A DNA stretch of 16,315 nucleotides from positions 1 to 16,315 of IMG/VR virus record IMGVR_UViG_3300024265_000603; one strand, given 5' to 3'. Below are positions 1-16,315 of this stretch, piece by piece (position 1 is the stretch's first letter; the number at the start of each line of letters is the position of its first letter). The translations under genes and the position numbers were made by a program. A model generated the notes under the pieces. The model had not been told where the DNA came from and made no database searches. It saw nothing but the letters and a program-made list of their open reading frames with translations.

Positions 1-315
1 CTTAAAACTGCACTTCCGAGCCCCTACTCATACCCTAACAAGACCAATCCTGAGATACTCTATGTATCGTAGTATAGGCAGAATACTTACTAAGTAAGAG
101 ATGGAGGGTTGTAAGAGGGTATGAGCAAAGAGGTACGATTATACAGAGAGTAGGTTGAGTTAAGAGTAGGGAGTGAGAGAGAATAGTTTGAGAGAGGTTG
201 TTTGGTTAAGGGTTGGTTGAGTGAGGTGGTTGTTAAAGAGGTGTAGAGAGATTGATTTAAAGAGGTGTTCTTAGAATGAGAGGTAGAAAGTGGTAAAGGG
301 GTTTTAAGAGTAGAC
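1..315 (+). repeat. Left terminal inverted repeat
   Basis: 1-291 is the exact reverse complement of 16025-16315; after a short mismatched patch, 301-315 matches 16001-16015. Confidence 0.98.
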
Positions 316-514
316 CAATGTTTAAGAAAATGAATTTGGATAGTTGATTTAGTGAGGTGTTATTAGAATAAACTTTAGGTAGAATAAGGGTGTAATATAT
401 TTGGTATAGAGAGTGTGAGAATTGAAATGTAATATTGATTGTAGACATAAAAGAAGGGATTTAAAAAATTAACTCAGGAAGGAAAATGAAAAAAGAAAAG
501 GGTTGATTAAAGAG

Positions 515-631
515 TTAAAAGAATATAAAATAAGGAATTTCTTTTGATGTTAAGACTATTATTAAACTAAATATAGCAAGGATAAGTAAAATTAAAACAA
601 TAATTAATCCTTCTAACTTTATATTATTCAT
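515..631 (-). CDS. 38-aa single-TM membrane peptide (MNNIKLEGLIIVLILLILAIFSLIIVLTSKEIPYFIFF)
   Basis: Hand-translated; ATGA overlap with the stop of the upstream ORF; hydrophobic; followed by a T-rich tract. Confidence 0.6.
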   Translation of the reverse strand: MNNIKLEGLIIVLILLILAIFSLIIVLTSKEIPYFIFF

Positions 632-813
632 AAGAAATATTCATATTCATTGTTATTATCTACACCATTACAGATACAAGTAAAATAAGTATAAACAAAA
701 TAATAAGGAAAAATAATACTTCTAAATATAAAATGTATATTTAAACTTAAAGGAAGTAAGAAGCTAACAAATAACCATAATATAAATATTATTTTTCTTG
801 TTATTATTTTCAT
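628..813 (-). CDS. Small membrane protein, 61 aa (MKIITRKIIF...)
   Basis: 3' part of track ORF 628..891; start moved to the ATG after the GTGAATAATATG junction motif. Confidence 0.55.
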   Translation of the reverse strand: MKIITRKIIFILWLFVSFLLPLSLNIHFIFRSIIFPYYFVYTYFTCICNGVDNNNEYEYFL

Positions 814-818
814 ATTAT

Positions 819-908
819 TCACATTCTTATAATGATATCTAATATTAATGTTGTAAATAAAGCTATAATTGATAATATTAATATAATACAATAATACTTT
901 TCTTTCAT
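819..908 (-). CDS. 29-aa membrane micropeptide (MKEKYYCIILILSIIALFTTLILDIIIRM), paralog of 2302..2394
   Basis: Hand-translated; junction motifs on both sides; clear similarity to 2302..2394. Confidence 0.65.
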   Translation of the reverse strand: MKEKYYCIILILSIIALFTTLILDIIIRM

Positions 909-909
909 A

Positions 910-1134
910 TCATTCACTTTTTAAGTAAGAAAAGAATTTATAGAAATCAATTATTTGATTTAAAGAATAAAGAAATTTTGTTTGATTTTGAATATATATA
1001 ATATATTTATCTCTTATTTTATTAATCTCTTTAATTTTTTGTTTGTTTGATAATTTATTATCATCTATTATTAAATAAGAATTAATAAGACAATCAAAAC
1101 CTTTTTTATAAAGTTTATATTTTTCTATACTCAT
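910..1134 (-). CDS. Hypothetical protein
   Basis: Track ORF 910..1143; ATG at 1134 preferred over GTG; ends KSE*. Confidence 0.7.
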   Translation of the reverse strand: MSIEKYKLYKKGFDCLINSYLIIDDNKLSNKQKIKEINKIRDKYIIYIQNQTKFLYSLNQIIDFYKFFSYLKSE

Positions 1135-1139
1135 ATCAT

Positions 1140-1352
1140 TCACTCTAAATAACTTATTTCTTTTACCTTATTATCTTTTAATATTTTTACTTGGTCATAA
1201 ATAAATATATCTGTAATACCTTTTAAGAAATGACTACTATTAATATATTTTCTAAATATCTTTATTGCTTTAAGAATATTTTTCGCTTTACATATTAATA
1301 CTATGCTATTATAAGATTCATTACAAATATTTTTTGTATAATAAGTTTTCAT
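1140..1352 (-). CDS. Hypothetical protein
   Basis: Track ORF 1140..1361; ATG after the junction motif. Confidence 0.7.
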   Translation of the reverse strand: MKTYYTKNICNESYNSIVLICKAKNILKAIKIFRKYINSSHFLKGITDIFIYDQVKILKDNKVKEISYLE

Positions 1353-1353
1353 A

Positions 1354-1533
1354 TTATTCACTTTTAATATGTGTAAAACTTGAAATATAAGGATAAGTAA
1401 AATATCCTTCTTTTAATGACATATTTAACCATTCTATTAAACATTTAATACATAGATTAGATGAGTTAAATATAAATCCTTTAATGTGAACATATTCATT
1501 TATTTCTTTTTTACATTCACTACATTTTGTCAT
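1354..1533 (-). CDS. Small C4 zinc-finger protein
   Basis: CSEC...CIKC; ends KSE*; track ORF 1354..1542. Confidence 0.7.
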   Translation of the reverse strand: MTKCSECKKEINEYVHIKGFIFNSSNLCIKCLIEWLNMSLKEGYFTYPYISSFTHIKSE

Positions 1534-1534
1534 A

Positions 1535-1750
1535 TCATTCACTTTTTAATTTGTTAATTCTCTTATATATTCTTTTATTAATTTGTATTAATAATAAGTC
1601 AATTAAGCCTAAAATAATTGTTGTTAAATGTATAGTTAATCCTTTAATTCCAGTTAAACTAATTATCCATAAAGGAATAATATAAATAAAAATTCCAAAA
1701 ATTAAATGATGTATTAAAAAGCTTAAAGTTTCTAATGTTTTAAGTTTCAT
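1535..1750 (-). CDS. Small two-TM membrane protein
   Basis: Two hydrophobic segments and a basic tail; ends KSE*; track ORF 1535..1759. Confidence 0.7.
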   Translation of the reverse strand: MKLKTLETLSFLIHHLIFGIFIYIIPLWIISLTGIKGLTIHLTTIILGLIDLLLIQINKRIYKRINKLKSE

Positions 1751-1755
1751 ATTAT

Positions 1756-1893
1756 TCACTTATATTCTATTTGATAACCACTAATTAAATCTTTTTTAAT
1801 TAATTCTTTACAAAATTTATCTATTTCACTATAGATTGATGTAAAAGGTTCACATTCTTTTAATTTAACAATAAAATCAACTTTATATGACAT
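1756..1893 (-). CDS. 45-aa hypothetical protein (MSYKVDFIVKLKECEP...)
   Basis: Hand-translated; exactly fills the gap between two junction motifs. Confidence 0.65.
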   Translation of the reverse strand: MSYKVDFIVKLKECEPFTSIYSEIDKFCKELIKKDLISGYQIEYK

Positions 1894-1894
1894 A

Positions 1895-2053
1895 TTATTC
1901 ACTTTTTATTAATTTCTCAAGTCTAAAAAGTACTTCTATAATAGATAAATAATAATTAGTTGATACTTTGATACTTCTAATCAAATTTTCATTTAATTTA
2001 TCTACTTTTGTTTCTATATCTTTTATTGTTTGTTCTATTCTATATATTTCCAT
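1895..2053 (-). CDS. 52-aa coiled-coil-like protein (MEIYRIEQTIKDIETKVDKLNENL...KSE)
   Basis: Hand-translated; junction motifs on both sides. Confidence 0.65.
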   Translation of the reverse strand: MEIYRIEQTIKDIETKVDKLNENLIRSIKVSTNYYLSIIEVLFRLEKLIKSE

Positions 2054-2061
2054 ATTATTCA

Positions 2062-2100
2062 CTTTTGGATAACTACGTTTTTGTAATTATCTTACAAAAG
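2062..2100 (-). promoter_or_regulatory. Bulged intergenic hairpin H1
   Basis: - strand CTTTTG-TAA-GATAATTAC-AAAAAC-GTAGTTATC-CAAAAG; one U.G wobble. Confidence 0.7.
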
Positions 2101-2110
2101 AAAAAATTAA

Positions 2111-2296
2111 TTATAATCTTATATCTACTCTTTCAATATCATTTAGATTAGTAATTAGATAAGTACCTAATTCAAAATAACTCATTTCTGATTCTTTATA
2201 ATTAATAGTATGATAATCTTTATCATATATTCTAACAAGAAACTTTTGTTCTTTACTAATCTCTAATGCTTGACCAATAATATCCTTTAATTCCAT
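2111..2296 (-). CDS. Hypothetical protein
   Basis: Track ORF 2111..2305; ATG after the junction motif. Confidence 0.7.
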   Translation of the reverse strand: MELKDIIGQALEISKEQKFLVRIYDKDYHTINYKESEMSYFELGTYLITNLNDIERVDIRL

Positions 2297-2301
2297 ATTA
2301 T

Positions 2302-2394
2302 TCACTTTCTTATGATTAAATCTATTATTATTGGTGTAAGAAAAGCAATAATTCCGTATATCAACACTAATATATAAAAGTATTTATCTTTCAT
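2302..2394 (-). CDS. 30-aa membrane micropeptide (MKDKYFYILVLIYGIIAFLTPIIIDLIIRK), paralog of 819..908
   Basis: Hand-translated; SD-like AAGGTG upstream; stop lies in the junction motif. Confidence 0.65.
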   Translation of the reverse strand: MKDKYFYILVLIYGIIAFLTPIIIDLIIRK

Positions 2395-2397
2395 ATC

Positions 2398-2670
2398 TTA
2401 CACCTTTTTATTTTCTGATTTCTTTTTATCATAGTTCAATTTAGCAATTCTTTCTATATCATAATATATTATTATAGCAGACATAATTATAATTCCACAC
2501 TTAATATAGAAAATTAAAGCTATTACAAAAATGCTTCTGAAATTCTTTACAAATAAACTTATAATAATAATATCTATAGCATTTATTATTATTATGCTAA
2601 ATAATGTTCTATGAAAAAGATTCCACCTTTCATTATTTAATTTAATTTTTTTAAATTGTAATTTTTTCAT
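2398..2670 (-). CDS. Two-TM membrane protein
   Basis: Track ORF 2398..2679; two hydrophobic stretches. Confidence 0.7.
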   Translation of the reverse strand: MKKLQFKKIKLNNERWNLFHRTLFSIIIINAIDIIIISLFVKNFRSIFVIALIFYIKCGIIIMSAIIIYYDIERIAKLNYDKKKSENKKV

Positions 2671-2678
2671 ATTATTCA

Positions 2679-2717
2679 CTTTTGGATAATTACGATTATG
2701 TAATTATCTTACAAAAG
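2679..2717 (-). promoter_or_regulatory. Bulged intergenic hairpin H2
   Basis: 6-bp lower stem, TAA bulge, perfect 9-bp GATAATTAC/GTAATTATC stem, 6-nt loop. Confidence 0.7.
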
Positions 2718-2723
2718 AAAATT

Positions 2724-3026
2724 TTAAATAATTATTGTATGATTAACTAAATTAATAGTATATATAGAATACCTTAATCTAATCAATAATGTAATTGCTT
2801 GAATTATTTCTTTATAGAATTCATCAAAATTAAGATGATTAGAAGGTATTTCTAAAGCTTCTTTACTCATTTCACCAATTTCCTCCATTATTATTACAAT
2901 CCACTTTTCAATAGTGTGAGTTTGATTAGGAAATTTTTTATCTTGAAATCTATATTCTTTCTCAATTTCTCTTAAAAATATTGATAATTTATTTTCTACA
3001 AAACTTTTCCAATTTTTATTTACCAT
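2724..3026 (-). CDS. MazG-like all-alpha nucleotide pyrophosphohydrolase
   Basis: E-x-x-x-Q-D-x-K-F, W-x-x-I-I-x-EEIGE-x-S-K-E and E-I-I-Q pattern typical of viral MazG-like proteins. Confidence 0.75.
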   Translation of the reverse strand: MVNKNWKSFVENKLSIFLREIEKEYRFQDKKFPNQTHTIEKWIVIIMEEIGEMSKEALEIPSNHLNFDEFYKEIIQAITLLIRLRYSIYTINLVNHTIII

Positions 3027-3037
3027 ATATTATTCAC

Positions 3038-3073
3038 TTTTGCTTAATCAGTAATTCTGATTAAGTATCAAAA
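3038..3073 (-). promoter_or_regulatory. Bulged intergenic hairpin H3
   Basis: TTTTG/CAAAA lower stem, 3-nt bulge, CTTAATCAG/CTGATTAAG stem, 5-nt loop. Confidence 0.7.
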
Positions 3074-3079
3074 ATAAAA

Positions 3080-3250
3080 TTATTTTCTATTGTATGGTTT
3101 AGTTCTTATTATTGTATCCACTACTAACTTAAATCTTTTACTAAATTCATAATGAATTATATCAAAATCAGAGTTATTTGGATTTGGTTTTAAATATAAG
3201 GTTAGTATTCTTTTATCTGTATTTACAATTACTTTATCAATTTCTTTCAT
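3080..3250 (-). CDS. 56-aa hypothetical protein (MKEIDKVIVNTDKRILTLYLKP...)
   Basis: Hand-translated; fills the gap between H3 and the upstream ORF. Confidence 0.6.
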   Translation of the reverse strand: MKEIDKVIVNTDKRILTLYLKPNPNNSDFDIIHYEFSKRFKLVVDTIIRTKPYNRK

Positions 3251-3252
3251 AT

Positions 3253-3519
3253 TTAATCAGTATCAGTCATTTTTATATTATTTAATTCATTATCTAAACT
3301 TTTAATTTTAATATTTGATATTGTTGTATCAATAGAAATTTGCTTTAATGTTAATTCATTAATAGCTTGTAATAATACAAGATTATTAAAACTGTGTAAT
3401 TCTCTTTTACTTAGACAATTTCTAAATTCTTGTATAAATAACTTTATAGTAGTAAAAGAAATATCTGGATAATTCATTAAAGTACTCTGAATCCAAATAA
3501 GAAATTTTTGTATTTTCAT
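3253..3519 (-). CDS. Hypothetical protein
   Basis: Track ORF; SD-like GAGGT and TAATG overlap with the upstream gene. Confidence 0.7.
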   Translation of the reverse strand: MKIQKFLIWIQSTLMNYPDISFTTIKLFIQEFRNCLSKRELHSFNNLVLLQAINELTLKQISIDTTISNIKIKSLDNELNNIKMTDTD

Positions 3520-3677
3520 TAATTTACCTCTGATTCTAATTTAAAGATTTTTACTATATAATTTCCTTTCGGTAAATTAAGTTCTTTTATATGGTTTGGA
3601 ATTCTAATTGTTAAATTTACCGGTGTATTATCTTTATATTTTTTCCAAATCCATTCAAATTTAAAGATTTCTTTCAT
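3519..3677 (-). CDS. 52-aa putative AbrB/SpoVT-like DNA-binding protein
   Basis: Hand-translated; LTIRIPNHIKELNLPKGNYIVKI resembles the AbrB swapped-hairpin pattern; junction motif upstream. Confidence 0.5.
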   Translation of the reverse strand: MKEIFKFEWIWKKYKDNTPVNLTIRIPNHIKELNLPKGNYIVKIFKLESEVN

Positions 3678-3686
3678 ATTATTCAC

Positions 3687-3722
3687 TTTTGCTTAATTAG
3701 TAATTCTAATTAAGTATCAAAA
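3687..3722 (-). promoter_or_regulatory. Bulged intergenic hairpin H4
   Basis: Same as H3 apart from a compensatory C-G to T-A change (CTTAATTAG/CTAATTAAG). Confidence 0.7.
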
Positions 3723-3728
3723 ATAAAA

Positions 3729-4160
3729 TTATTTAATTAATGAAACTATGTATACTTCAGCTTTACCTTTAAAGTTTGGTGTATCAATTTTAGCCATTGT
3801 TTTAGAAATTTGAATAATATGACCAATTAATTTTTCAAGTATTCCTTTAAAATGTTTTTGAATTAATACAGCCAATTGAAATTGAAAGCTTCTACCATTG
3901 GCATTAAATTGGTAAATGACATCATTCATTTCTAATAACATAGTATCATAAGTGTTTCCATCAGCAAATAAAGTCGGTGTAGGTAAAGAATGAACTTTTA
4001 CATTAAAAACATCAGAGACATTATCCCTTTCATTATAACTAACTTTTAATGTTGGTAATATATTAAGTTTTGAGACTTTATCCACTTTTTCCATTTCTAA
4101 ATTATCCATGAAGTTATAAACTTCTTTTTCTGTATCTTTTTCCTTTACCAAATTTTTCAC
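3729..4160 (-). CDS. Hypothetical protein, possible OB-fold ssDNA-binding protein
   Basis: 143-aa track ORF; beta-rich core ending in Y-x-V; lies near the replication genes; start uncertain (GTG 4160 or TTG 4151). Confidence 0.6.
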   Translation of the reverse strand: MKNLVKEKDTEKEVYNFMDNLEMEKVDKVSKLNILPTLKVSYNERDNVSDVFNVKVHSLPTPTLFADGNTYDTMLLEMNDVIYQFNANGRSFQFQLAVLIQKHFKGILEKLIGHIIQISKTMAKIDTPNFKGKAEVYIVSLIK

Positions 4161-4162
4161 TT

Positions 4163-4200
4163 CCTTTCACTAATTAGTTTATCTAATTAGTTTAAAAAAG
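4163..4200 (-). promoter_or_regulatory. Bulged intergenic hairpin H5
   Basis: - strand CTTTTT-TAA-ACTAATTAG-ATAAA-CTAATTAGT-GAAAGG; the lower stem pairs fully only with U.G wobbles on the - strand. Confidence 0.65.
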
Positions 4201-4218
4201 AAATTCTTAATTAGATTA

Positions 4219-4506
4219 TTAAAATTTAAATGATTCTTGTTCATTTTTACTTTTTGAGAATTTAGCTAATGTATTAGAGTAAGCTTCTGAAATAGAATCA
4301 AACATAGCTTCGACTTGTTCTGTACTGTATTCATAATTAACTCTTTTAGAACAATTACCAAGAATCCTTAAAGCTCTCAAAACATTTATTACTCTTAAGG
4401 GTGCTATTCTAAGAAAAGTTTCTGATTTTGTTTCTTTCTTTTCATTAGGCTTCTTATCTGTTTTTTTAACAGATTCCTTTTTTTCTACTTGTTTTTTATC
4501 TGGCAT
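4219..4506 (-). CDS. Conserved hypothetical helical protein (ETK...F-x-R-I-A-x-x-R...LGNCS...NYEYS-x-E-Q-V family)
   Basis: Track ORF; motif recalled from a widespread family of unknown function; first gene after the leftward TATA box. Confidence 0.8.
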   Translation of the reverse strand: MPDKKQVEKKESVKKTDKKPNEKKETKSETFLRIAPLRVINVLRALRILGNCSKRVNYEYSTEQVEAMFDSISEAYSNTLAKFSKSKNEQESFKF

Positions 4507-4540
4507 AATATTATACCTATATAATAAATGGTTTAGTTCT

Positions 4541-4553
4541 TATTTAAATCTTA
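4541..4553 (-). promoter_or_regulatory. Archaeal BRE/TATA promoter for the left-arm operon
   Basis: - strand TAAGA-TTTAAATA, ~35 nt upstream of ATG 4506; same core as the promoter at 15881. Confidence 0.6.
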
Positions 4554-4601
4554 TTTAGACAAGTAATTGGATTTGTTTAAACAATATATAAATAAATTTT
4601 G

Positions 4602-4651
4602 AAAAAGTGAAAAATGTTCATTTTAAATTAAAAAAAGTGAAAATTGTTCAT
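4602..4651. repeat. Two 20-bp direct repeats with an internal TGAA-N5-TTCA dyad (operator-like)
   Basis: AAAAAGTGAAAAATGTTCAT (4602-4621) and AAAAAGTGAAAATTGTTCAT (4632-4651), 30-bp period. Confidence 0.6.
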
Positions 4652-4705
4652 AGACCAATTTTGTTAAAAGCTTTCCATCATTTTATAGCATATCAACTTT
4701 TTAAA

Positions 4706-5188
4706 ATGAAAAATATGGTTTCTAAAGAGCAAAAAATAAAGGAAATTAAAGTAATCATAGGTAATAATCCTTCTCTTAATTCAAGTGAAACACTCAGGTT
4801 AATACAATCAGAAGGTTTAGGAATCCGTAAACAAGAATTTCAAACTTTATTTAGAGAACAGAGACAATTACCAGAACCTACAAAAGAGAAAAAAGAAAAA
4901 TCTGTACCTATAAAGTTTAGAAAGGGAATAGGAATAACCCCTATTGATAAACCAGATAAACCAAAAAAGGAGGGTCAATATGGAGTTATTGAAGTAATTG
5001 ATAATAAAGGAAATAGTTTTTGGATAAAGTATCAGAATAAAAAAGATTTTAATAGGCAATTAGAAAAAATTAAATCAAAATATTCTGTTAAAAAATTAAA
5101 ACTTGTTTCTCATGGCTTTAGAAATTATGTAGATTTCATTGATAAAGAGTTTAGGGAAATCTTAGAAACCGAGGGTATTATTTCATAA
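4706..5188 (+). CDS. Basic protein upstream of pPolB; candidate terminal protein or DNA-binding protein
   Basis: Track ORF 4607..5188, but its first 33 codons cover the regulatory repeats, so ATG 4706 or 4715 is preferred; S-x-x-x-L-R...GLGIRKQ helical motif. Confidence 0.7.
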   Translation: MKNMVSKEQKIKEIKVIIGNNPSLNSSETLRLIQSEGLGIRKQEFQTLFREQRQLPEPTKEKKEKSVPIKFRKGIGITPIDKPDKPKKEGQYGVIEVIDNKGNSFWIKYQNKKDFNRQLEKIKSKYSVKKLKLVSHGFRNYVDFIDKEFREILETEGIIS

Positions 5189-7125: not shown

Positions 7126-7151
7126 AAGATATTTTTTAAAAAAATTTCAGT

Positions 7152-7166: not shown

Positions 7167-7229
7167 TGAACATATCTTATTATTAATTAACTTTACCTAA
7201 AAATTTTTCATTTAAAAAGTTGATTTTTC

Positions 7230-7472: not shown

Positions 7473-7504
7473 TAAACCAGTATTTACTATTTTTTTATTT
7501 TTTT
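7461..7504 (+). terminator. Putative terminator after the capsid gene
   Basis: ACTGGT/ACCAGT inverted repeat followed by oligo-T tracts at about 7490-7504. Confidence 0.55.
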
Positions 7505-7510
7505 ATTAAG

Positions 7511-10600: not shown

Positions 10601-10764
10601 CATTAAGAATGACAATTGGTAAATTTGCTTTTATTCCATCTTTTATATTAATGACAATTATTTCCATTATAAGTGGCTTAATACCAACTTGGTTATTTTT
10701 TGTAATTATGTTATCAAGTTCGTTATTTATATTTAATGAAAAAGATAATAGAGTTGATATATAA
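7681..10764 (+). CDS. Large membrane-anchored adhesin/receptor-binding glycoprotein with tandem lectin (LamG/ConA)-like domains
   Basis: N-terminal signal peptide; beta-rich body with WYHIRIDF...FHIYVNG; ~19 N-x-S/T sequons counted by eye; three C-terminal TM segments. Confidence 0.8.
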   Translation: MKKFKSSLVLLFVLIVFTLSSIPLNVKGVLPDSIDYTFANNNLYDTTKPIFNESTNVNVRDVSEYTQFYNATFDFNNEIVGTNGTNIDFIDLATIGVDTTIQIISLLNGHRKVLELNDNDVGAEVIGQNTFDSTRLFGTIELFIRNTDTSLRTDILIRSGITNALQVAIAGNTANQLQYFDGIWNNIVSIIDNIWYHIRIDFECGADGYESLAPDTFHIYVNGIKYSDLSFRNTVSTVNNLRLQTNVGNSGYFTYFDAIGYSWFKPNYNFTNDVIGSFPEFWINNDDFPNMTTVIASLDGNTKVMEMNDFTRDGTTSSSLSFNRNQDGFIQFLIAKDNLSNDAHGRFRFQEGNNERMRFSFIGADLYYLHANTSTELFVSNALSLINTFTDFKFVLDDTNNEVDLYIDDILKQSNVNYFTNTVDTINKITIQTVEASVPDSIYRMFFDDFDFNHLTINTSINNIIPHIETNPFLKEVDTFTFDLVSANTLYDIGTDNPSGWSDVENGFDHTNIAQDNTDIPSGSRTNNRVVQIEGVGSDNAISGIEKDFNISSGIFNITMKYNYSLNNNDLGSFIISIFTQNLQLQVKINCTFVNAIFGNQLDYRNSSFKNVELIPFLDSTIAINQEVSYNIYIDSFVVFRATTEGSLGFHSYNFTFPLINPDSFGLGKIMIISDPTNVGGTFQTIELKEVGVYHNGISLSDDFGYLPSVISDNASFFWQFLAHNLITIEVLGNMAIHATSFNEWILGGNMEVISNMDTFNLTQRIINVYFQDFVHFGFLGIPTPMIVFFITSQFNLTSISINGIKFSDDTPHDFGFLAYESGGVDNNVSYFFLDSSNTLKYFHTTDDNNVNEFIQAELVIGGLDTNNTAIQFNSNKDNNAFGFFRVSYVSTSTIFKIQSIFKTTISILPNSKSIISYIILITDNNDNTVSGLTTGFVSNIKLLFTEQQIVSVITFSLLSVLIPLIIILIPSLALRMTIGKFAFIPSFILMTIISIISGLIPTWLFFVIMLSSSLFIFNEKDNRVDI

Positions 10765-10991
10765 TTCCAACAGAAATAGATTGGTTAATAGGTTTATCTT
10801 TAATGTTTGCTTTAGCTTTATTATTAACTTCAATGACTTATCAAAATATAGAAACATTTTTTATATTTCTAAATATATTTGCTGGTTTTATGGTTTGGTC
10901 AGGTTTAATAGAGCTATGGGTATTAGTACTTACTACAATTGTTTTGGTTTTTATTATTGGTAATAATGTATATAAAAAAAGAGGTTTTTAA
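10761..10991 (+). CDS. Small multi-TM virion/morphogenesis membrane protein
   Basis: Track ORF 10803..10991; frame is open upstream to ATA 10761, which follows SD-like GAGTTGA. Confidence 0.75.
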   Translation: MIPTEIDWLIGLSLMFALALLLTSMTYQNIETFFIFLNIFAGFMVWSGLIELWVLVLTTIVLVFIIGNNVYKKRGF

Positions 10992-10994
10992 AAA

Positions 10995-11444
10995 ATGCTT
11001 ATAGGATTAAGTTTATTTGTAATAATTATATTAGGTTTTCTTTCCATTATGTTGGGAAGTGAGTATTTAGCTAATACTATAAATGTTGGAATTGATAACA
11101 CTTCACTTGTAAATGGTTCAATTACTACTTATGTTGTAGAAACAGAAACAGTTTTATTTGAAATAGATACTTCTGTTTTTATTGTTGCGGGAATTGCTTT
11201 ATTGATAACTGTTGCCATTGTTGCGGGAATTACTGGAATTCAAGTTTTGGGTTCTGGTTTAAACAGTGAAAGTGTTAAAATAATAATTATGATAACAGCT
11301 TTTACAGGAATTTGGATTACTCTGTCAATAATAGCTATTAATTTAATTTCCAGTATAGCTATTTTTGGAAGTATTATTTATATAGGATTAACACTAATGT
11401 ATGTAATTGGTGTAGTACAGAAATTAACTGGAGGTGGTGGATAA
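10995..11444 (+). CDS. Multi-TM membrane protein (putative minor virion protein)
   Basis: About four hydrophobic segments; NTS and NGS sequons; SD GAGGT. Confidence 0.85.
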   Translation: MLIGLSLFVIIILGFLSIMLGSEYLANTINVGIDNTSLVNGSITTYVVETETVLFEIDTSVFIVAGIALLITVAIVAGITGIQVLGSGLNSESVKIIIMITAFTGIWITLSIIAINLISSIAIFGSIIYIGLTLMYVIGVVQKLTGGGG

Positions 11445-11777
11445 ATGATTGATTTCTTACAAGCAGAACCATTTCCACCAACAGATATAGAAGCTGTAGC
11501 AATAACTAATATAGGTTTAATGTATGCTCATATATTTATTTTGATTTTTTTATTACTATTAATGTTATTTTTATATTTAAAATCATCAAAAGAATTAAAG
11601 GAAGGTTTACCAATATTAGTAATATATCTGTTTTCATTATTAATTGGAATAAAAAGTTTTGAGCATCCACATACACCATTTAGCCCTTTACTTGAATCAT
11701 TTTTTCTAATATTTCAAACAGTTATATTCTTATTAACAGCTTTTAATGTATATGATAATAAAATGAAAAGTAGATAA
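11445..11777 (+). CDS. Three-TM membrane protein
   Basis: Hydrophobic; SD GGAGGTGG; abuts the upstream stop. Confidence 0.85.
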   Translation: MIDFLQAEPFPPTDIEAVAITNIGLMYAHIFILIFLLLLMLFLYLKSSKELKEGLPILVIYLFSLLIGIKSFEHPHTPFSPLLESFFLIFQTVIFLLTAFNVYDNKMKSR

Positions 11778-11780
11778 ACT

Positions 11781-12182
11781 ATGTTTAATAAAAAGAAAAG
11801 ATATTTGGCAATTTTTTTAATAAAAGAACAAAATTCTTTTACCATTGTTGGAAAAAAATTATTTAATCCTAATAATCCAGAGATTAGTTATAGTGGTAAA
11901 GCTTATATTATTAAAACAGATAAATCTACTTATTCAAAAGGATTAACTCAATTTTATTTCTTAATAAAAGATACTAAACAACAACTATTATTTAGTAAAC
12001 ACGAGAAATCTGATTTAATAGATACGGCTTTAGTGGATTCTATATTATCGAAAAAGATAATCAAACAATTAACTTCAGATTTAGGTAATACAGATTATCG
12101 GTCAATTATCTTTTATTTGATAATAGGATTAACTATTGGTGGTTTAATAGGTTTTATAATTGGTAAAGGTGGTTTTGGATAA
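11781..12182 (+). CDS. Protein with a C-terminal TM anchor (morphogenesis module)
   Basis: Soluble N-terminal domain plus a Gly-rich C-terminal hydrophobic helix. Confidence 0.85.
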   Translation: MFNKKKRYLAIFLIKEQNSFTIVGKKLFNPNNPEISYSGKAYIIKTDKSTYSKGLTQFYFLIKDTKQQLLFSKHEKSDLIDTALVDSILSKKIIKQLTSDLGNTDYRSIIFYLIIGLTIGGLIGFIIGKGGFG

Positions 12183-12539
12183 ATGTCAATTGAAAATGAA
12201 CTTCCAGATTTACTTTCTAATCCTTTAAGTGAATTATCCAGAGATAAAAATATTACTTTACAACAAATATTAAATAATCTATTAGACGGAAGTAAAGACT
12301 TAGAGTTAAAGACACATATATTTAAACCTAAAGCTTTAAGTGGATTAAAGATAATTGCTGATGCTTTAATGAGTAAAGGGTATAAAACTTCCGCAAATCA
12401 TATTCTAAATTATATTGATACTTATCTTAAATACATGGTTAGTTATCAGAGAAAAAGTAGAACCGAAATAATTAAAGCTTTTACTATGTCAAGCAGAAAA
12501 GAAGTAATGGATAACGATTTTACAAAAAGTTTGGATTAA
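12183..12539 (+). CDS. Hypothetical helical protein preceding the ATPase
   Basis: Track ORF; coupled to both neighbours. Confidence 0.85.
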   Translation: MSIENELPDLLSNPLSELSRDKNITLQQILNNLLDGSKDLELKTHIFKPKALSGLKIIADALMSKGYKTSANHILNYIDTYLKYMVSYQRKSRTEIIKAFTMSSRKEVMDNDFTKSLD

Positions 12540-13231
12540 TGTTAGTAATTATACTTGGCAATTTAGGGAGCGGTAAAACTTATATTATGATGTTATTAGC
12601 TTATCAAGATAAAAGACAAATATTATCTAATTTTAATATAAAAAGAAAGAATGTAAAGGTAATTGATGTACCAGATTTACTTGATTTACCAGATGATATA
12701 GTTTTATTAATGGATGAAGCTTATAGTTGGATTGAATCCAGAAGTAGTCTTGATTCATTGAATAAATATTTATCAAGTGTTTTATTCCATATTAGAAAAA
12801 CCAATACTGATATTTATATTACTACACCAATGTATTCTACAATAGATAAAAGGTTTCGAAATCAGGCTAATTATATAATTTTTTGTAAACATAGAAATAA
12901 TTTTGAATCTGATGATTTTCATTTTTTATTCTATGATGTAAATAATAGAACTTATGGAATTAGTACACTAAAGTATTCTGAAGCTAAAAAATACTTTCAT
13001 TTATATGATACTAATGAAAAAGTAGAATCATACAAGAAAAGAGGTTTACAATTCAATATCTTAAAAAAATATCCAGAAAGAATGAAAGAATATATAAAAC
13101 AAATATCAAAATTAGCAAATAAACAATTAAATGGTAATATTACTCACGACAGAGTAAAGAAATTTCTATTTGATAATGGAATTGATTTAGGTTTTCATTC
13201 ATTTCTATATATAGATTTAAAAGGTAATTAA
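12539..13231 (+). CDS. P-loop morphogenesis/extrusion ATPase (Zot/inovirus pI-like, as in spindle-shaped viruses)
   Basis: Walker A GNLGSGKT at the N-terminus, Walker B LLMDEA, HIRK and IDKRFR motifs. Confidence 0.88.
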   Translation: MLVIILGNLGSGKTYIMMLLAYQDKRQILSNFNIKRKNVKVIDVPDLLDLPDDIVLLMDEAYSWIESRSSLDSLNKYLSSVLFHIRKTNTDIYITTPMYSTIDKRFRNQANYIIFCKHRNNFESDDFHFLFYDVNNRTYGISTLKYSEAKKYFHLYDTNEKVESYKKRGLQFNILKKYPERMKEYIKQISKLANKQLNGNITHDRVKKFLFDNGIDLGFHSFLYIDLKGN

Positions 13232-13232
13232 A

Positions 13233-13406
13233 ATGATAACAACAATAAAGATAACAAAATATATTAAATTACAACAATGTTCTAATCATGGTTTAAAGGT
13301 TTTCTTAAAATATAAGGGTAAATGGATAATGATTAAATTAACAAATTATCAAGTAGAATTATTACAATATATATTAAATATTATAAATGGTAAACATGAA
13401 AAATAA
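13233..13406 (+). CDS. 57-aa basic hypothetical protein (MITTIKITKYIKLQQCSNHG...)
   Basis: Hand-translated; SD-like AAGGT; fills the gap after the ATPase. Confidence 0.55.
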   Translation: MITTIKITKYIKLQQCSNHGLKVFLKYKGKWIMIKLTNYQVELLQYILNIINGKHEK

Positions 13407-14202
13407 ACTAAAAAGAATTTTTGCTTCGGTTAGATATTCATTAATGTTTAAAACAATGAAATATATAACACCAATAATGTATGAAAAGTTTATTATCTTA
13501 AATAATATCTGGAAAAGTAAAAATCATATTGGTGGCAAATTAGATAATGTAAATAGAATTCCAAGACCAGCAATATTATTTATAAAAAAATATTTTAAAG
13601 ATAAACTAATTACTGGATTAGAATTAGGTGTTAAATTAGGTAAAAATTCTGAAAGTATTCTAAAAGAGTTAAATATTCAAACTCTTTATCTGATTGATGC
13701 TTGGGATGATTATGTTGCGAATGAAATAACTAAAGAAGGGCAAAAAAGACATTACTTACTTACATTGAAAAAATTTAAAGATGATAATAGAGTAAAAATA
13801 ATAAAGGGTTTTTCCGAAAATATTGTTCATAGATTTGATAATGAGAGTTTGGATTTTGTATATATTGACGGAAATCATAGTTATGATTTTGTTTATCAAG
13901 ATATAACTATATGGAGTAAAAAAGTAAAACAAAATGGAATTATATCTGGTCACGATATTTTTAATTTTAATGATGTATTATCAGCTGTTAAGAAGTGGAG
14001 TATAAAAAATCAATATAATTTCTTTATAAAACCACCAGATTGGTATATTATAAAGAAAGATATTATTACTTGTAAAGAATGTAGTTATTGTAATAAAGAA
14101 TTAGATATATGTACTTATGAAAGTATTGAGAAATTATCAAATAAAAATCTTGAAATTTGTATTTGTTTTATGCCAATAATGAATTATAATATAAGAAAAT
14201 GA
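13387..14202 (+). CDS. Class I SAM-dependent methyltransferase (Methyltransf_24-like) with a Cys-rich C-terminal tail
   Basis: GLELGVKLG, LYLIDAW, LDFVYIDGNHSY and GIISGHD motifs; CKECSYC...C...CIC tail; start 13387 or 13396. Confidence 0.88.
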   Translation: MVNMKNKLKRIFASVRYSLMFKTMKYITPIMYEKFIILNNIWKSKNHIGGKLDNVNRIPRPAILFIKKYFKDKLITGLELGVKLGKNSESILKELNIQTLYLIDAWDDYVANEITKEGQKRHYLLTLKKFKDDNRVKIIKGFSENIVHRFDNESLDFVYIDGNHSYDFVYQDITIWSKKVKQNGIISGHDIFNFNDVLSAVKKWSIKNQYNFFIKPPDWYIIKKDIITCKECSYCNKELDICTYESIEKLSNKNLEICICFMPIMNYNIRK

Positions 14203-14327
14203 AAACTAATAAATTAAAAATGTGTTGGATTAAAGGGAATCCATGTTTTAACCAAACCAATGATGTAAGAAAATGTATTGAATGTAGTATATGGAGTAAA
14301 GAATATAGAAATAATAATAATAATTAA
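14199..14327 (+). CDS. 42-aa four-cysteine metal-binding peptide (CWIKGNPC...CIEC)
   Basis: Hand-translated; ATGA overlap with the methyltransferase stop. Confidence 0.6.
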   Translation: MKTNKLKMCWIKGNPCFNQTNDVRKCIECSIWSKEYRNNNNN

Positions 14328-14329
14328 CT

Positions 14330-14599
14330 ATGAAAAATAAATATAAATTCTTAATTTGTATTATAGCATTAGGAATATTAGCTTCAGTTTCTTTAATTGT
14401 ACCAAGTGAATCTAAAATGGTAATACCTTCTAAAGTAATTAATTCTACTTGTATTGGAATGTGTGGAAGTAAACCTTTACAAGATATAGAGTTTTTTATA
14501 TTTTTAACAGTATTATTACCTTTATTTGCTATAGTACTTTTTATTTTTCTATTTATGTTTGATAAGGATAAAAAGAAAAATAAGATTAATCGTGAATAA
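14330..14599 (+). CDS. Two-TM membrane protein
   Basis: Two hydrophobic helices; loop with NST and CxxxC; basic tail. Confidence 0.7.
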   Translation: MKNKYKFLICIIALGILASVSLIVPSESKMVIPSKVINSTCIGMCGSKPLQDIEFFIFLTVLLPLFAIVLFIFLFMFDKDKKKNKINRE

Positions 14600-14639
14600 T
14601 TGTTTACCATTAACAGTTTAATGATTAAATGTTTCATAA

Positions 14640-14834
14640 TTATCTTTCAATTAATATTTGTTTAATCATATCATATTTTCTAACTAATACAGTTAATTCA
14701 GAATCTAAAATATCAAATCTAACTTGATTTTTAGTGTTTATAGCTTCTGTATATTGATTAAAAACTTCAAAAATTTGCCATCCTACAAATCTATACATTG
14801 AGTATAAATTTTTAAGTTTTCTATTAATTGTCAT
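14640..14834 (-). CDS. Hypothetical protein
   Basis: Track ORF; converges on the + strand block. Confidence 0.6.
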   Translation of the reverse strand: MTINRKLKNLYSMYRFVGWQIFEVFNQYTEAINTKNQVRFDILDSELTVLVRKYDMIKQILIER

Positions 14835-14931
14835 AAATAATAATTGATTCCTTAGAATAAGAATTTACTCATTATACTAAATAAGAGAAAAAAGTTCCAT
14901 AATTTTAAAATAAAAGAAAAAGAAAAAATAT

Positions 14932-15111
14932 TTAATAGTATTTAAAAGAATTAATCAAACAAATGTTCATTCTTGAAAAATCAAATTTATCTATTAATCT
15001 TTTTGAAGGTTCTTTACCTACATTACCTTTTACAACATATTGATAATTTATTAATTCATTACCTAAATAATCTTTCATGTATAAAGTTATTAATTTTATT
15101 TTATCAAACAT
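14932..15111 (-). CDS. Hypothetical protein
   Basis: Track ORF 14932..15120; ATG after AAAAGTGAAAACT; followed by a T-rich tract. Confidence 0.6.
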   Translation of the reverse strand: MFDKIKLITLYMKDYLGNELINYQYVVKGNVGKEPSKRLIDKFDFSRMNICLINSFKYY

Positions 15112-15116
15112 AGTTT

Positions 15117-15317
15117 TCACTTTTGGTTTATTTTTATTATTATAGATTTAGGAATCCAAATATTTTGTTTAACAGAATGGTGTACAGCTATTACAGGGTG
15201 TAGTTTAAAATGAATAGCTTTATTAGTTTCTTTTATAATATTTCCATCTAAACAATTAGGATTTCTCATAAGATTATTCTTTTTTAGAAACCATTCTGGT
15301 AAATAAATACTTATCAT
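15117..15317 (-). CDS. Small beta-rich viral protein (IIKETxKA...WIPKS family)
   Basis: Motif recalled from small phage and archaeal-virus hypothetical proteins; SD-like GAGTTGA. Confidence 0.75.
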   Translation of the reverse strand: MISIYLPEWFLKKNNLMRNPNCLDGNIIKETNKAIHFKLHPVIAVHHSVKQNIWIPKSIIIKINQK

Positions 15318-15332
15318 TTTTAATCAACTCTA

Positions 15333-15367
15333 TTTGGTTATTTAGGATTATCTAAATAACTTTCAAA
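15333..15367 (-). promoter_or_regulatory. Bulged intergenic hairpin H6
   Basis: TTTG/CAAA lower stem, 3-nt bulge, GTTATTTAG/CTAAATAAC stem, 6-nt loop. Confidence 0.7.
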
Positions 15368-15375
15368 AAGAAAAA

Positions 15376-15645
15376 TTAAAATATGTAATAACCTTCTTTA
15401 AATGCTTTATCAATAGATTCTTTATTATCTTTATACACATTTTCACATTCTAAAGAACAAAAATCAGATTTAGGTAATATTTTAAAAGTACTTCCACAGG
15501 CTTTACATTCTCTATGTTCTTTACACAGTCTAATAGAAATAATACCTCTACTCTCAAGATAATTAGTAAGATTATTACATCCATAAACAGAACATAAATC
15601 ATTTTTTAGAACTTTTTTAGGTGGTATAATATTATTATATGTCAT
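15376..15645 (-). CDS. Double zinc-finger protein
   Basis: CSVYGC...CKEH followed by CKAC...FCSLEC; track ORF 15376..15654. Confidence 0.75.
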   Translation of the reverse strand: MTYNNIIPPKKVLKNDLCSVYGCNNLTNYLESRGIISIRLCKEHRECKACGSTFKILPKSDFCSLECENVYKDNKESIDKAFKEGYYIF

Positions 15646-15654
15646 AGTTTTCAC

Positions 15655-15691
15655 TTTTGGTTATTTAGGTTTGTCTAAATAACTTTCAAAA
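15655..15691 (-). promoter_or_regulatory. Bulged intergenic hairpin H7
   Basis: Same upper stem as H6 with a different loop. Confidence 0.7.
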
Positions 15692-15696
15692 AGAAA

Positions 15697-15855
15697 TTAT
15701 TGATTTAATTTTTCTAATTCTCTTTTAATAATTCTCATATAAGAATCAATTTTGTTTATATCATTAGAATCCATTATTTTTTGTTTATTTGCTTCATAAT
15801 GTTCAAACCAATTCATTATTATGTTCATTTGATTTTTTTGTTTTTTATTTAGCAT
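15697..15855 (-). CDS. 52-aa hypothetical protein (MLNKKQKNQMNIIMNWFEHY...), probably leaderless
   Basis: Hand-translated; ATG ~26 nt downstream of the TATA box. Confidence 0.65.
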   Translation of the reverse strand: MLNKKQKNQMNIIMNWFEHYEANKQKIMDSNDINKIDSYMRIIKRELEKLNQ

Positions 15856-15880
15856 TATAATATAATAATCATTTATCTAT

Positions 15881-15896
15881 TATTTAAATCTTTTCC
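15881..15896 (-). promoter_or_regulatory. Archaeal BRE/TATA promoter for the right-arm operon
   Basis: - strand GGAAAAGA-TTTAAATA. Confidence 0.7.
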
Positions 15897-16000
15897 TTAC
15901 ACCACATTTTCCCTAAAAATTATACCCTCCTTCTATTTAACTCTCATTCTATTAACCCCTCTTAAAACCAACCCTCATTTTACTCATATACTAAAAAATC

Positions 16001-16315
16001 GTCTACTCTTAAAACCCTTTCTCTACTTTCTACCTCTCATTCTAAGAACACCTCTTTAAATCAATCTCTCTACACCTCTTTAACAACCACCTCACTCAAC
16101 CAACCCTTAACCAAACAACCTCTCTCAAACTATTCTCTCTCACTCCCTACTCTTAACTCAACCTACTCTCTGTATAATCGTACCTCTTTGCTCATACCCT
16201 CTTACAACCCTCCATCTCTTACTTAGTAAGTATTCTGCCTATACTACGATACATAGAGTATCTCAGGATTGGTCTTGTTAGGGTATGAGTAGGGGCTCGG
16301 AAGTGCAGTTTTAAG
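16001..16315 (-). repeat. Right terminal inverted repeat
   Basis: Reverse complement of 1-315, compared base by base. Confidence 0.98.

What the first reader, a model, noticed from the sequence alone, without database searches (positions are those of the whole stretch)
1..16315. Apparently complete genome of a pPolB spindle-shaped archaeal virus, possibly infecting Asgard archaea
Seen: TIRs, pPolB, hairpin-type MCP, adhesin, membrane proteins, pI-like ATPase, TATA/BRE promoters, very low GC, and proteins that are not acidic overall (unlike haloarchaeal proteins). Established: His1 (Halspiviridae) and NSV1 (Thaspiviridae) are linear pPolB spindle viruses, and spindle-type viruses have been linked to Asgard archaea (wyrdviruses, Huginnvirus). 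Inference: a new member or lineage, plausibly infecting Lokiarchaeia.
Basis: partly seen in the sequence, partly recalled or inferred. Interest (0 to 1): 0.7.

Follow-up and report, generated by a model that had tools for sequence, protein, structure and literature searches.

The report
Published Asgard archaeal virus WyrdV3 genome

Summary
The window is base-for-base the JGI contig Ga0209976_10001089 (16,315 bp). Medvedeva et al. named this contig WyrdV3 and annotated it gene by gene.

- end-anchored 324-nt terminal inverted repeats
- an 80-aa two-helix capsid protein
- a 1027-aa secreted, membrane-anchored adhesin
- five conserved small genes
- a Zot/pI-like ATPase without a membrane segment
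- 23% GC and a basic proteome

The generic TATA consensus is not enriched over chance.

My own tests agree with the published reading. The whole morphogenetic module is shared with WyrdV1 and with Muninn virus. A profile of the capsid family picks His1 VP21 as the only His1 ORF. The ATPase profile matches His1 ORF16.

Spindle shape and an Asgard host remain inferences. I found no CRISPR spacer recorded for WyrdV3 itself.

Small additions:
- The pPolB has no canonical start codon upstream of its ExoI motif. It most likely starts at ATA 5185, a trait conserved in its clade, so database calls of 563 aa are truncated.
- Early genes carry a fixed ribosome-binding motif and palindromic upstream cassettes.

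Verdict: already known, low interest.

The parts
1..324 (.). Left terminal inverted repeat, G-rich on the + strand
   Evidence: 98% complementary to 15992-16315. End-anchored.
515..4506 (-). Left arm with 16 small genes, mostly without known relatives. Includes a CxxC-pair Zn-finger candidate at 1354-1533, small membrane proteins at 1535-1750 and 2398-2670, and 2724-3026, which is published as MazG-like
   Evidence: Gene calls. CxxC counts and hydrophobic segments. No Pfam hits. Published HHsearch annotation for genes 5 and 11.
4507..4705 (.). Divergent intergenic control region. Holds two copies of AAAAAGTGAAAAWTGTTCAT at about 4602-4621 and 4632-4651
   Evidence: Read directly from the sequence.
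4706..5188 (+). Lys-rich 160-aa protein (pI 10 for the full 193-aa mechanical ORF from GTG 4607), directly upstream of pPolB. Candidate terminal protein, by inference only. The mechanical ORF starts at GTG 4607; ATG 4706 gives a length like that of relatives
   Evidence: Conserved upstream of pPolB in L007, L008 and L009 at 30-38% identity. Relatives have 156-180 aa genes at this position. No family hit.
5185..7125 (+). [quoted passage not shown] The frame is open from 5155 and the ExoI motif FIFVDTES lies at 5242-5265. The only canonical start, ATG 5434, lies downstream of ExoI. The probable start is ATA 5185
7230..7472 (+). His1-like major capsid protein: 80 aa, two hydrophobic helices, N-S-T sequon in the connecting loop
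   Evidence: 46% identical to the WyrdV1 MCP. hhalign against the Muninn MCP gives 97.8%. The extended family profile hits His1 ORF21 at E 8.5e-10. Model. Published HHsearch 99.48% to His1 VP21.
7488..7507 (+). Oligo-T run (TATTTTTT x2.5) just after the MCP stop codon. Looks like an archaeal terminator
   Evidence: Function is inferred.
7511..7681 (+). 56-aa protein with one C-terminal hydrophobic segment
   Evidence: A gene of similar size sits at this position in WyrdV1 and in relatives.
7681..10764 (+). Adhesin or tip protein of 1027 aa. Has a signal peptide, two N-terminal beta-sandwich (ConA/LamG-like) domains at about residues 70-270 and 280-455, further beta domains, and three C-terminal membrane helices
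   Evidence: 26% identity over 1030 aa to the WyrdV1 adhesin, E 1e-55. Homologue P0307 (30% identity, 99% coverage) has Laminin_G_3 at residues 129-245. Model. Published HHsearch hit to neurexin 99.61%.
10803..12539 (+). Block of five conserved morphogenesis genes: 10803-10991, 10995-11444, 11445-11777, 11781-12182, 12183-12539. The first four have membrane segments
   Evidence: All five are matched in WyrdV1 at 35-49% identity and in the same order. Three are matched in Muninn virus. Hydrophobic segments.
12539..13231 (+). pI/Zot-like P-loop ATPase of 230 aa. Walker A GNLGSGKT, Walker B LLMDEA, no membrane segment
   Evidence: 39% identical to the WyrdV1 ATPase. hhalign against His1 ORF16 gives 92.6%, E 4.4e-7.
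13387..14202 (+). Methyltransferase (Methyltransf_24; published as a carbohydrate O-methyltransferase) with a Cys-rich C-terminal tail
   Evidence: Pfam E 3.9e-16. 46% identical to the WyrdV1 O-MTase. Published annotation.
13233..13406 (+). Small 57-aa ORF between the ATPase and the methyltransferase
   Evidence: Gene call only.
14199..14599 (+). Two small ORFs. 14330-14599 encodes a protein with two hydrophobic segments
14640..15855 (-). Right arm with five small genes read inward from the right end. Includes a Cys-rich treble-clef-like protein at 15376-15645
   Evidence: Weak Pfam DUF2116 hit. Published as a Zn finger, gene 35.
15992..16315 (.). Right terminal inverted repeat

Best explanation
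The window is the complete (or complete to within a few terminal bases) linear dsDNA genome of WyrdV3, a member of the wyrdviruses. These are uncultured archaeal viruses from anoxic marine sediment that carry the hallmark genes of His1-type spindle-shaped viruses.

Proposed workings:
(1) The genome is replicated from both ends by its own protein-primed family B polymerase, using a terminal protein that stays attached to the 5' ends. The polymerase and the TIRs are shown. The 160-aa gene just upstream as the primer protein is inferred from position only.
(2) The small genes of both arms are early or regulatory. Each transcription unit has a T-rich box, a palindrome and a fixed ribosome-binding motif. 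The motifs are shown; their function is inferred.
(3) The 80-aa two-helix capsid protein inserts into the host membrane. The particle is assembled and extruded without lysis with the help of the soluble pI/Zot-like ATPase and the five small, mostly membrane-bound proteins. The large lectin-domain protein, anchored by its C-terminal helices, forms the receptor-binding tip. Homologies are shown; the mechanism is inferred by analogy with His1, SSV1 and filamentous phages.
(4) The methyltransferase may modify glycans on virion or host surface proteins (inferred).
(5) The host is most likely an Asgard archaeon, probably of the Lokiarchaeia (inferred by relatedness).
For: - Identity: the pPolB gene product maps to JGI 3300024265 contig Ga0209976_10001089, which is 16,315 bp, the same length as the window, with the gene at identical coordinates (5434-7125). 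That contig is named WyrdV3 and described with TIRs and pPolB.
- TIRs.
- pPolB.
- Whole MCP-adhesin-five genes-ATPase-MTase module colinear with WyrdV1 (MZ666939): MCP 46%, adhesin 26% (E 1e-55), five genes 35-49%, ATPase 39%, MTase 46%.
- The same module is found in Muninn virus of Ca. Odinarchaeum.
- MCP family link to His1: a profile of 150 family representatives hits His1 ORF21 at E 8.5e-10, the only His1 ORF among 530 six-frame ORFs.
- ATPase profile against His1 ORF16: 92.6% probability, 136 columns. The ATPase also matches PHROG 5484 (named 'DnaA-like replication initiation protein'), the same product name that RefSeq gives His1 ORF16 and SSV1 B251; I did not check that these two proteins are members of that PHROG.
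- Asgard link: the WyrdV1 record gives a Lokiarchaeota host. Muninn is targeted by Odinarchaeum spacers. Two of the three pPolB relatives in species-representative genomes sit in Promethearchaeota and Hermodarchaeota MAGs and carry the same module.
- Spindle-shaped particles with His1-like MCPs and this ATPase type were seen on an Asgard cell in 2026.
Against: - No virion of this virus or of any wyrdvirus has been imaged, so spindle shape rests on MCP homology.
- Foldseek with the MCP model found nothing significant in BFVD or PDB.
- Single-sequence hhalign to His1 VP21 is weak, 21-23%. SSV1 VP1 is not detected.
- The pPolB is not detectably similar to the His1 pPolB by tblastn.
- In the supplementary files held, WyrdV3 appears only in the annotation table, so no spacer match is recorded for it there.
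- One relative is binned in a Thermoplasmatota MAG. Binning of 12-14 kb viral contigs is unreliable in either direction.
- The pPolB lacks a canonical start codon before ExoI.
Confidence: 0.88

Rival explanations
1. The host is not an Asgard archaeon but another sediment archaeon, for example Thermoplasmatota or a DPANN lineage. On this view wyrdvirus-like viruses span several phyla, and the WyrdV3 clade belongs to one that has not been linked.
For: No spacer match is recorded for WyrdV3 in the files held. A relative with the same module (L009, 43% pPolB identity, GC 35%) is binned in a Thermoplasmatota MAG. In the pPolB tree the WyrdV3 clade is separate from the group that holds the Loki- and Hermod-binned sequences. 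One adhesin-domain relative comes from an unclassified 'archaeon CG_4_10' bin.
Against: The only CRISPR-backed links in this virus group are to Lokiarchaeota (WyrdV1) and Odinarchaeum (Muninn). Two of three MAG-binned relatives are Asgard. A partial adhesin homologue is from a Promethearchaeota MAG. The same JGI sample holds an Asgard-targeted element. GC of 23% fits low-GC Lokiarchaeia-type hosts better than the 35% GC relative does.
Confidence: 0.15
2. It is a pleolipovirus-like pleomorphic membrane-vesicle virus, similar to the 16-kb TIR/pPolB virus His2, rather than a spindle-shaped one.
For: The gene order resembles the pleolipovirus core: a small membrane protein, a large spike with signal peptide and C-terminal anchor, multi-pass membrane proteins, then an NTPase. 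This comparison is from my own knowledge, and the source paper makes it only for replication-module plasticity.
Against: The small membrane protein belongs to the His1 VP21 family and the ATPase matches His1 ORF16. No pleolipovirus appears among the tblastn hits for pPolB, MCP or ATPase in the GenBank phage and archaeal-virus set. I did not run a direct profile comparison with pleolipovirus VP3, VP4 or VP8.
Confidence: 0.05
3. It is a defective or non-viral linear plasmid whose polymerase gene is broken, having lost its start codon.
For: There is no ATG, GTG or TTG between the frame opening at 5155 and the ExoI motif. Gene callers give a 563-aa product without ExoI.
Against: The same arrangement is found in seven relatives that share 61-83% protein identity (L010, L011, L012, L013, L014, L016 without a plausible canonical start; L015 with TTG at the same position). 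The N-terminal peptide is conserved in all, and the AGGT core lies 8-10 nt upstream in the seven whose upstream DNA was printed. The trait marks a well-supported clade. All structural genes are intact and colinear with WyrdV1.
Confidence: 0.03

Closest known systems
WyrdV3 itself (Ga0209976_10001089; Medvedeva et al., 'Viruses of Asgard archaea', bioRxiv 10.1101/2021.07.29.453957)
   Same: Same contig, same length, same gene set and same annotations.
   Different: Nothing in the sequence differs. I add the likely ATA start of pPolB, the terminal-protein candidate and the early-gene control motifs.
Lokiarchaeota virus WyrdV1 (MZ666939)
   Same: Colinear module of MCP, small gene, adhesin, five genes, ATPase and O-MTase at 26-49% identity. 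Many small Zn-finger genes.
   Different: WyrdV1 has two MCP paralogues, no pPolB and no reported TIRs. It carries TFB-like and ASCH genes and has GC 28%. It is the only one of the two with a CRISPR-based host link.
Muninn virus of Ca. Odinarchaeum yellowstonii (OM716000)
   Same: Linear genome with TIRs and pPolB (27% identity). His1-like MCP (hhalign 97.8%). Homologues of the adhesin, of three of the five-gene block and of the ATPase.
   Different: Thermophilic source, 12.7 kb, GC 35%, module inverted relative to pPolB. Its ATPase gene is not annotated in the record.
His1 virus (Halspiviridae, Salterprovirus)
   Same: Linear genome of about 14-16 kb with TIRs and pPolB. One MCP of roughly 75-80 aa with two helices, from the same family. 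Homologous ATPase. Many CxxC mini-proteins. Genes at the arms on the opposite strand.
   Different: His1 has a haloarchaeal host, whereas this proteome is basic. There is no tblastn-level similarity in any protein, including pPolB. His1 carries a glycosyltransferase rather than a methyltransferase.
Fuselloviridae (SSV1)
   Same: Predicted budding-type spindle virus with a small hydrophobic MCP, a large tip protein and a B251-type ATPase. The ATPase match is weak: hhalign 30%, E 5e-4.
   Different: SSV1 is circular, has an integrase and has no pPolB. VP1 is not detected by the MCP profile. The B277 match is only 36% probability and lies mostly in a membrane segment.

Membership tests
Wyrdviruses (Medvedeva et al.) | His1-like MCP of about 80 aa with two hydrophobic segments | tested here: met
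   80 aa with segments at 1-38 and 45-80. 46% and 40% identical to the two WyrdV1 MCPs. Helices at 2-32 and 51-73.
Wyrdviruses (Medvedeva et al.) | Large receptor-binding adhesin gene downstream of the MCP | tested here: met
   7681-10764 matches the WyrdV1 adhesin at 26% over 1030 aa, E 1e-55. LamG-type domains are present in homologues.
Wyrdviruses (Medvedeva et al.) | [quoted passage not shown] | tested here: met
   Exactly five genes lie at 10803-12539. Each is matched in WyrdV1 in the same order at 35-49% identity.
Wyrdviruses (Medvedeva et al.) | AAA+/P-loop ATPase related to the pI protein of filamentous phages, lacking a transmembrane domain | tested here: met
   Pfam Zot 31.4 bits against a cut-off of 20.3. 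PHROG families 'Zot-like' and 'protein I of M13'. No hydrophobic segment. 39% identical to the WyrdV1 ATPase.
Wyrdviruses (Medvedeva et al.) | Association with Asgard archaea through CRISPR spacers | not testable with these tools
   No spacer database or whole-genome spacer scan was available. WyrdV3 is absent from the spacer tables among the supplements held. The link is indirect, through WyrdV1 and MAG-binned relatives.
Halspiviridae (His1) | MCP homologous to His1 VP21 | tested here: met
   The extended profile hits the His1 ORF21 frame at E 8.5e-10 and 33.9 bits, and no other His1 ORF. Single-sequence hhalign is only 21-23%.
Halspiviridae (His1) | Linear genome with TIRs and a pPolB orthologous to that of His1 | tested here: not met
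   TIRs and a pPolB are present. However, tblastn of the window pPolB against the His1 genome finds nothing at E 1e-3.
Halspiviridae (His1) | Haloarchaeal host with an acidic proteome | tested here: not met
   Proteome pI 9.2, with K+R above D+E. GC is 23% and the source is marine sediment.
Fuselloviridae | VP1-type MCP, circular genome and a tyrosine integrase | tested here: not met
   SSV1 VP1 is not detected, E 2.9. The genome is linear with TIRs. No integrase appears among the Pfam hits.
Spindle-shaped archaeal viruses (morphotype) | Lemon-shaped virion built from the small hydrophobic MCP | not testable with these tools
   This needs electron microscopy. The closest experimental support is the spindle particles on an Asgard cell attributed to NMV3, which has His1-like MCPs and the same ATPase type.

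The most novel reading that the evidence does not exclude
In the WyrdV3 clade the polymerase gene is translated from a non-AUG codon: AUA in most members, GUA in one, UUG in one. This codon sits behind a normal AGGT ribosome-binding site and directly at the stop codon of the putative terminal-protein gene. The arrangement would be a conserved device that keeps polymerase output low or ties it to terminal-protein synthesis. It also means that the 563-aa polymerase entries for this clade in public protein sets lack the ExoI motif only because of gene calling. In addition, the seven early transcription units carry three kinds of palindrome between a T-rich box and a fixed ribosome-binding motif. 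This suggests a small repressor-operator circuit encoded by the many Zn-finger and mini-proteins.
Probability: 0.5. Interest if true: 0.3.

Novelty: already known. Interest (0 to 1): 0.15.

Why it matters
[quoted passage not shown] That point was made when this very genome was published.

This re-examination adds three things:
- An independent confirmation of the hallmark homologies.
- A caution that the host of WyrdV3 itself is still only inferred.
- A practical correction: the polymerase of this clade is mis-called in public databases because it lacks a canonical start codon.

The control motifs could help anyone who wants to build expression tools for Asgard archaea from such viruses.

Tried and rejected
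- Megablast of the whole window against GenBank phage and archaeal-virus records gave no match. WyrdV3 is not deposited there; identity came from the JGI contig look-up.
- Foldseek with the MCP model against BFVD and PDB gave nothing significant. A two-helix hairpin is too simple for it.
- A PDB sequence search with the MCP profile gave only chance membrane-helix hits.
- hhalign of the family profile against single His1 VP21 sequences was weak. The link only became significant with a 150-member profile.
- I considered a -1 frameshift fusing the upstream ORF to pPolB and rejected it. In L011 the upstream ORF ends 10 nt before the polymerase frame opens, and in L015 the frame opens exactly at a TTG start.
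- The SSV1 B277 match of the 11781-12182 family was inconclusive at 36%. His1 ORF18 gave no match.
- The generic TATA consensus is not enriched.
- PDB sequence searches with the ATPase and the adhesin gave nothing.
- There are no tRNA genes and no Rfam families.
- The window's terminal sequence is not conserved in relatives.

Full report
**What is in the window.**
The 16,315-bp window has 23.4% GC. It ends in inverted repeats of 324 nt that are 98% complementary and start at the very first and last base.

Genes fall into three blocks:
- Sixteen small genes on the minus strand, at 515-4506.
- A long plus-strand block, at 4607-14599.
- Five small minus-strand genes, at 14640-15855.

The plus-strand block holds, in order:
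- a 160-193-aa basic protein
- a family B polymerase of the protein-primed type (Pfam DNA_pol_B_2 E 6.9e-31; PHROG 1907 E 2.7e-48)
- an 80-aa protein with two hydrophobic helices
- a 56-aa membrane protein
- a 1027-aa protein with a signal peptide, 19 N-glycosylation sequons and three C-terminal helices
- five small genes, four of them with membrane segments
- a 230-aa P-loop ATPase that passes the Pfam Zot threshold and has no membrane segment
- a Methyltransf_24 methyltransferase

The predicted proteome is basic, with pI 9.2. There are no tRNA genes and no Rfam families. The generic archaeal TATA consensus is no more frequent than in shuffled sequence, at 20 against 27.7 expected.

**What it is.**
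The exact polymerase gene product maps to JGI metagenome 3300024265, contig Ga0209976_10001089. That contig is 16,315 bp, the same length as the window, and the gene sits at identical coordinates (5434-7125).

The contig is named in 'Viruses of Asgard archaea' (Medvedeva et al., bioRxiv 10.1101/2021.07.29.453957) as WyrdV3. It is one of two wyrdvirus contigs there with terminal inverted repeats and a pPolB.

The paper's Table S5 annotates the following:

| Gene | Published annotation | HHsearch |
|---|---|---|
| 18 | pPolB | 100% |
| 19 | His1-like MCP | 99.48% to His1 VP21 |
| 21 | adhesin | 99.61% to neurexin (LamG) |
| 25 | B277-like | 92.61% (best hit YhcB) |
| 27 | pI-like ATPase | 99.79% |
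| 29 | carbohydrate O-methyltransferase | 99.6% |
| 11 | MazG-like | 98.01% |
| 5, 35 | Zn fingers | 80.19%, 91.32% |

The finding is therefore an already published and annotated genome. It is absent from the GenBank-derived phage set, which explains the empty megablast result.

**Independent tests of the homologies.**
- *Against WyrdV1 (MZ666939).* tblastn recovers the whole module in the same order: MCP 46% and 40% (two paralogues), adhesin 26% over 1030 aa (E 1e-55), the five genes 35-49%, ATPase 39%, methyltransferase 46%.
- *Against Muninn virus of Ca. Odinarchaeum.* It shares pPolB, MCP, adhesin, three of the five genes and the ATPase.
- *MCP family.* The family profile matches the Muninn MCP at 97.8% probability. 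Against the single His1 VP21 sequence, hhalign is weak at 21-23%. A full HMMER scan of 1.84 billion representatives found 222 family members. A profile built from 150 of them then hit the His1 ORF21 frame at E 8.5e-10, and it was the only His1 ORF among 530 six-frame ORFs from five reference viruses. SSV1 VP1 was not detected.
- *MCP structure.* The AlphaFold2 model is a helix-loop-helix (helices 2-32 and 51-73, pLDDT 78.5), with a conserved N-x-S/T sequon in the loop. Foldseek found nothing significant, as expected for so simple a fold.
- *ATPase.* The family profile matches His1 ORF16 at 92.6% over 136 columns. The match to SSV1 B251 is weak.
- *Adhesin.* Its homologues carry Laminin_G_3 domains. 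P0307, which is 30% identical over 99% of the length, has one at residues 129-245. The model shows beta-sandwich domains at about residues 70-270 and 280-455.

**How it most likely works.**
- *Shown:* TIRs plus a pPolB with ExoI, ExoII, YxGG and DTDS motifs. This is the signature of protein-primed replication from both ends.
- *Inferred:* the basic 160-aa protein directly upstream is the terminal protein. It is conserved at that position in all relatives examined. This is the gene order found in phi29-, PRD1- and AP50-type phages; the AP50 terminal-protein annotation is seen.
- *Inferred by analogy with His1, SSV1 and filamentous phages, as the source paper proposed:* the hydrophobic MCP accumulates in the host membrane. 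The soluble pI-like ATPase and the small membrane proteins drive assembly and extrusion without lysis. The lectin-domain protein forms the receptor-binding tip.
- An oligo-T run directly after the MCP gene (7488-7507) would fit a short, abundant MCP transcript.

**Host.**
The only CRISPR-backed links in this virus group are WyrdV1 to a Lokiarchaeota MAG and Muninn to Odinarchaeum.

Among 185,579 species-representative genomes only three contigs encode a close pPolB relative. They come from a Promethearchaeota MAG, a Hermodarchaeota MAG and a Thermoplasmatota MAG, and all three carry the wyrdvirus module.

In the supplements held, WyrdV3 appears only in the annotation table. In a pPolB tree the WyrdV3 clade is distinct from the subtree that holds the MAG-labelled sequences. 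An Asgard host is therefore the best guess, at roughly 0.75-0.8, but it is not shown for this genome.

A 2026 preprint reports spindle-shaped particles on an Asgard cell and attributes them to a virus with His1-like MCPs and the same ATPase type. This strengthens the morphological inference for the group.

**New details.**
1. *Polymerase start.* The polymerase frame is open from 5155 and encodes ExoI (FIFVDTES, 5242-5265). The first ATG, GTG or TTG is at 5434, downstream of ExoI. Gene callers therefore report 563 aa.
   - Relatives of 61-83% protein identity conserve the N-terminal peptide (I/V/L)KHNFH(E/K)FRKNK.
   - The codon at the position of the first residue is ATA in five (the window, L010, L012, L014, L016), an Ile codon in L013 (read from the translation only), GTA in one (L011) and TTG in one (L015).
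   - An AGGT core lies 8-10 nt upstream in every sequence whose upstream DNA was printed (all but L013), like the ribosome-binding sites of the late genes.
   - A frameshift fusion with the upstream gene is excluded by L011 and L015.
   - The short gene calls cluster in one well-supported clade, where 9 of 12 calls are short.
2. *Fixed ribosome-binding motif.* Eleven early genes carry the motif AAGTGAAWRMTATG. No copy is expected by chance.
3. *Upstream cassettes.* Seven early transcription units have a T-rich box followed by one of three palindrome types and then that motif. The pattern was derived from these same sites, so its enrichment is partly circular.

**Verdict.**
The remaining uncertainty concerns host and morphology, which no sequence tool can settle. 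Interest is low. The non-AUG polymerase start and the control cassettes are modest additions.

Noticed in passing
window 5155-5434 (also L010-L016): The pPolB has no canonical start codon upstream of its ExoI motif. The probable start is ATA 5185, which overlaps the TAA stop of the upstream gene and has an AGGT core 8-10 nt upstream. The trait is conserved in a clade of relatives, and public gene calls of 552-572 aa lack ExoI.
   Followed up: yes
window 906-3688 and 15109-15656, minus strand: Eleven early genes share the exact motif AAGTGAAWRMTATG (Shine-Dalgarno-like AGTGA plus a fixed spacer plus ATG), against 0 expected from shuffles. Late genes use GAGGT or GGTGG instead.
   Followed up: partly
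window 2064-2104, 2681-2721, 3027-3085, 3676-3734, 4170-4203, 15333-15373, 15656-15696: Seven upstream cassettes each have a T-rich box followed by a palindrome. There are three main types: GATAATTAC-N6-GTAATTATC, CTTAATYAG-N5-CTRATTAAG and GTTATTTAG-N5/6-CTAAATAAC. A tandem CTAATTAG pair sits ahead of 3729-4151. These are candidate operators or 5'-UTR hairpins.
   Followed up: partly
window 4602-4621 and 4632-4651: Two copies of AAAAAGTGAAAAWTGTTCAT lie 30 nt apart in the divergent intergenic region. They overlap the mechanical GTG 4607 start, so the real start of the upstream gene is more likely ATG 4706.
   Followed up: no
window 7488-7507: An oligo-T tandem (TATTTTTT x2.5) lies immediately after the MCP stop codon and looks like an archaeal terminator.
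   Followed up: no
window 7347-7355 (MCP residues 40-42): An N-S-T sequon sits in the loop between the two MCP helices. An N-x-S/T sequon is kept in most relatives, which is consistent with a glycosylated capsid protein.
   Followed up: no
L002 (Muninn virus OM716000) 8031-8720, minus strand: This is an unannotated homologue of the wyrdvirus ATPase (28% identity, E 4e-14). Its Walker A motif follows directly, in the same frame, after the TAA stop of the upstream gene, with no canonical start codon. It overlaps the annotated 3' end of the pPolB CDS.
   Followed up: partly
L009 (JAWOGM010000025, Thermoplasmatota MAG) 7164-7600 and surroundings: A wyrdvirus-like element with 35% GC has two tandem MCP paralogues and a rearranged module, and is binned in a non-Asgard MAG. 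This is either mis-binning or a wider host range.
   Followed up: partly
L018 (ENA ERZ27271168 k141_2749251), both ends: The ends of this contig carry sequencing-adapter sequence (Nextera transposase and P7-like), so this public assembly has untrimmed adapters at the ends of a 16.6-kb wyrdvirus-like contig.
   Followed up: no
window 257-448 (-) and 14248-14637 (-): These are mechanical ORFs of 63 and 129 aa. One lies next to or inside the repeat region and the other is antisense to the plus-strand genes. Neither was called as a gene in the JGI record, and both are probably non-coding.
   Followed up: no
database-wide: The family is much larger than the nine contigs of the original paper. The word-indexed search found 328 pPolB relatives, and 222 MCP representatives at 50% clustering have E below 0.001. 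Many lie on 12-19 kb contigs.
   Followed up: partly
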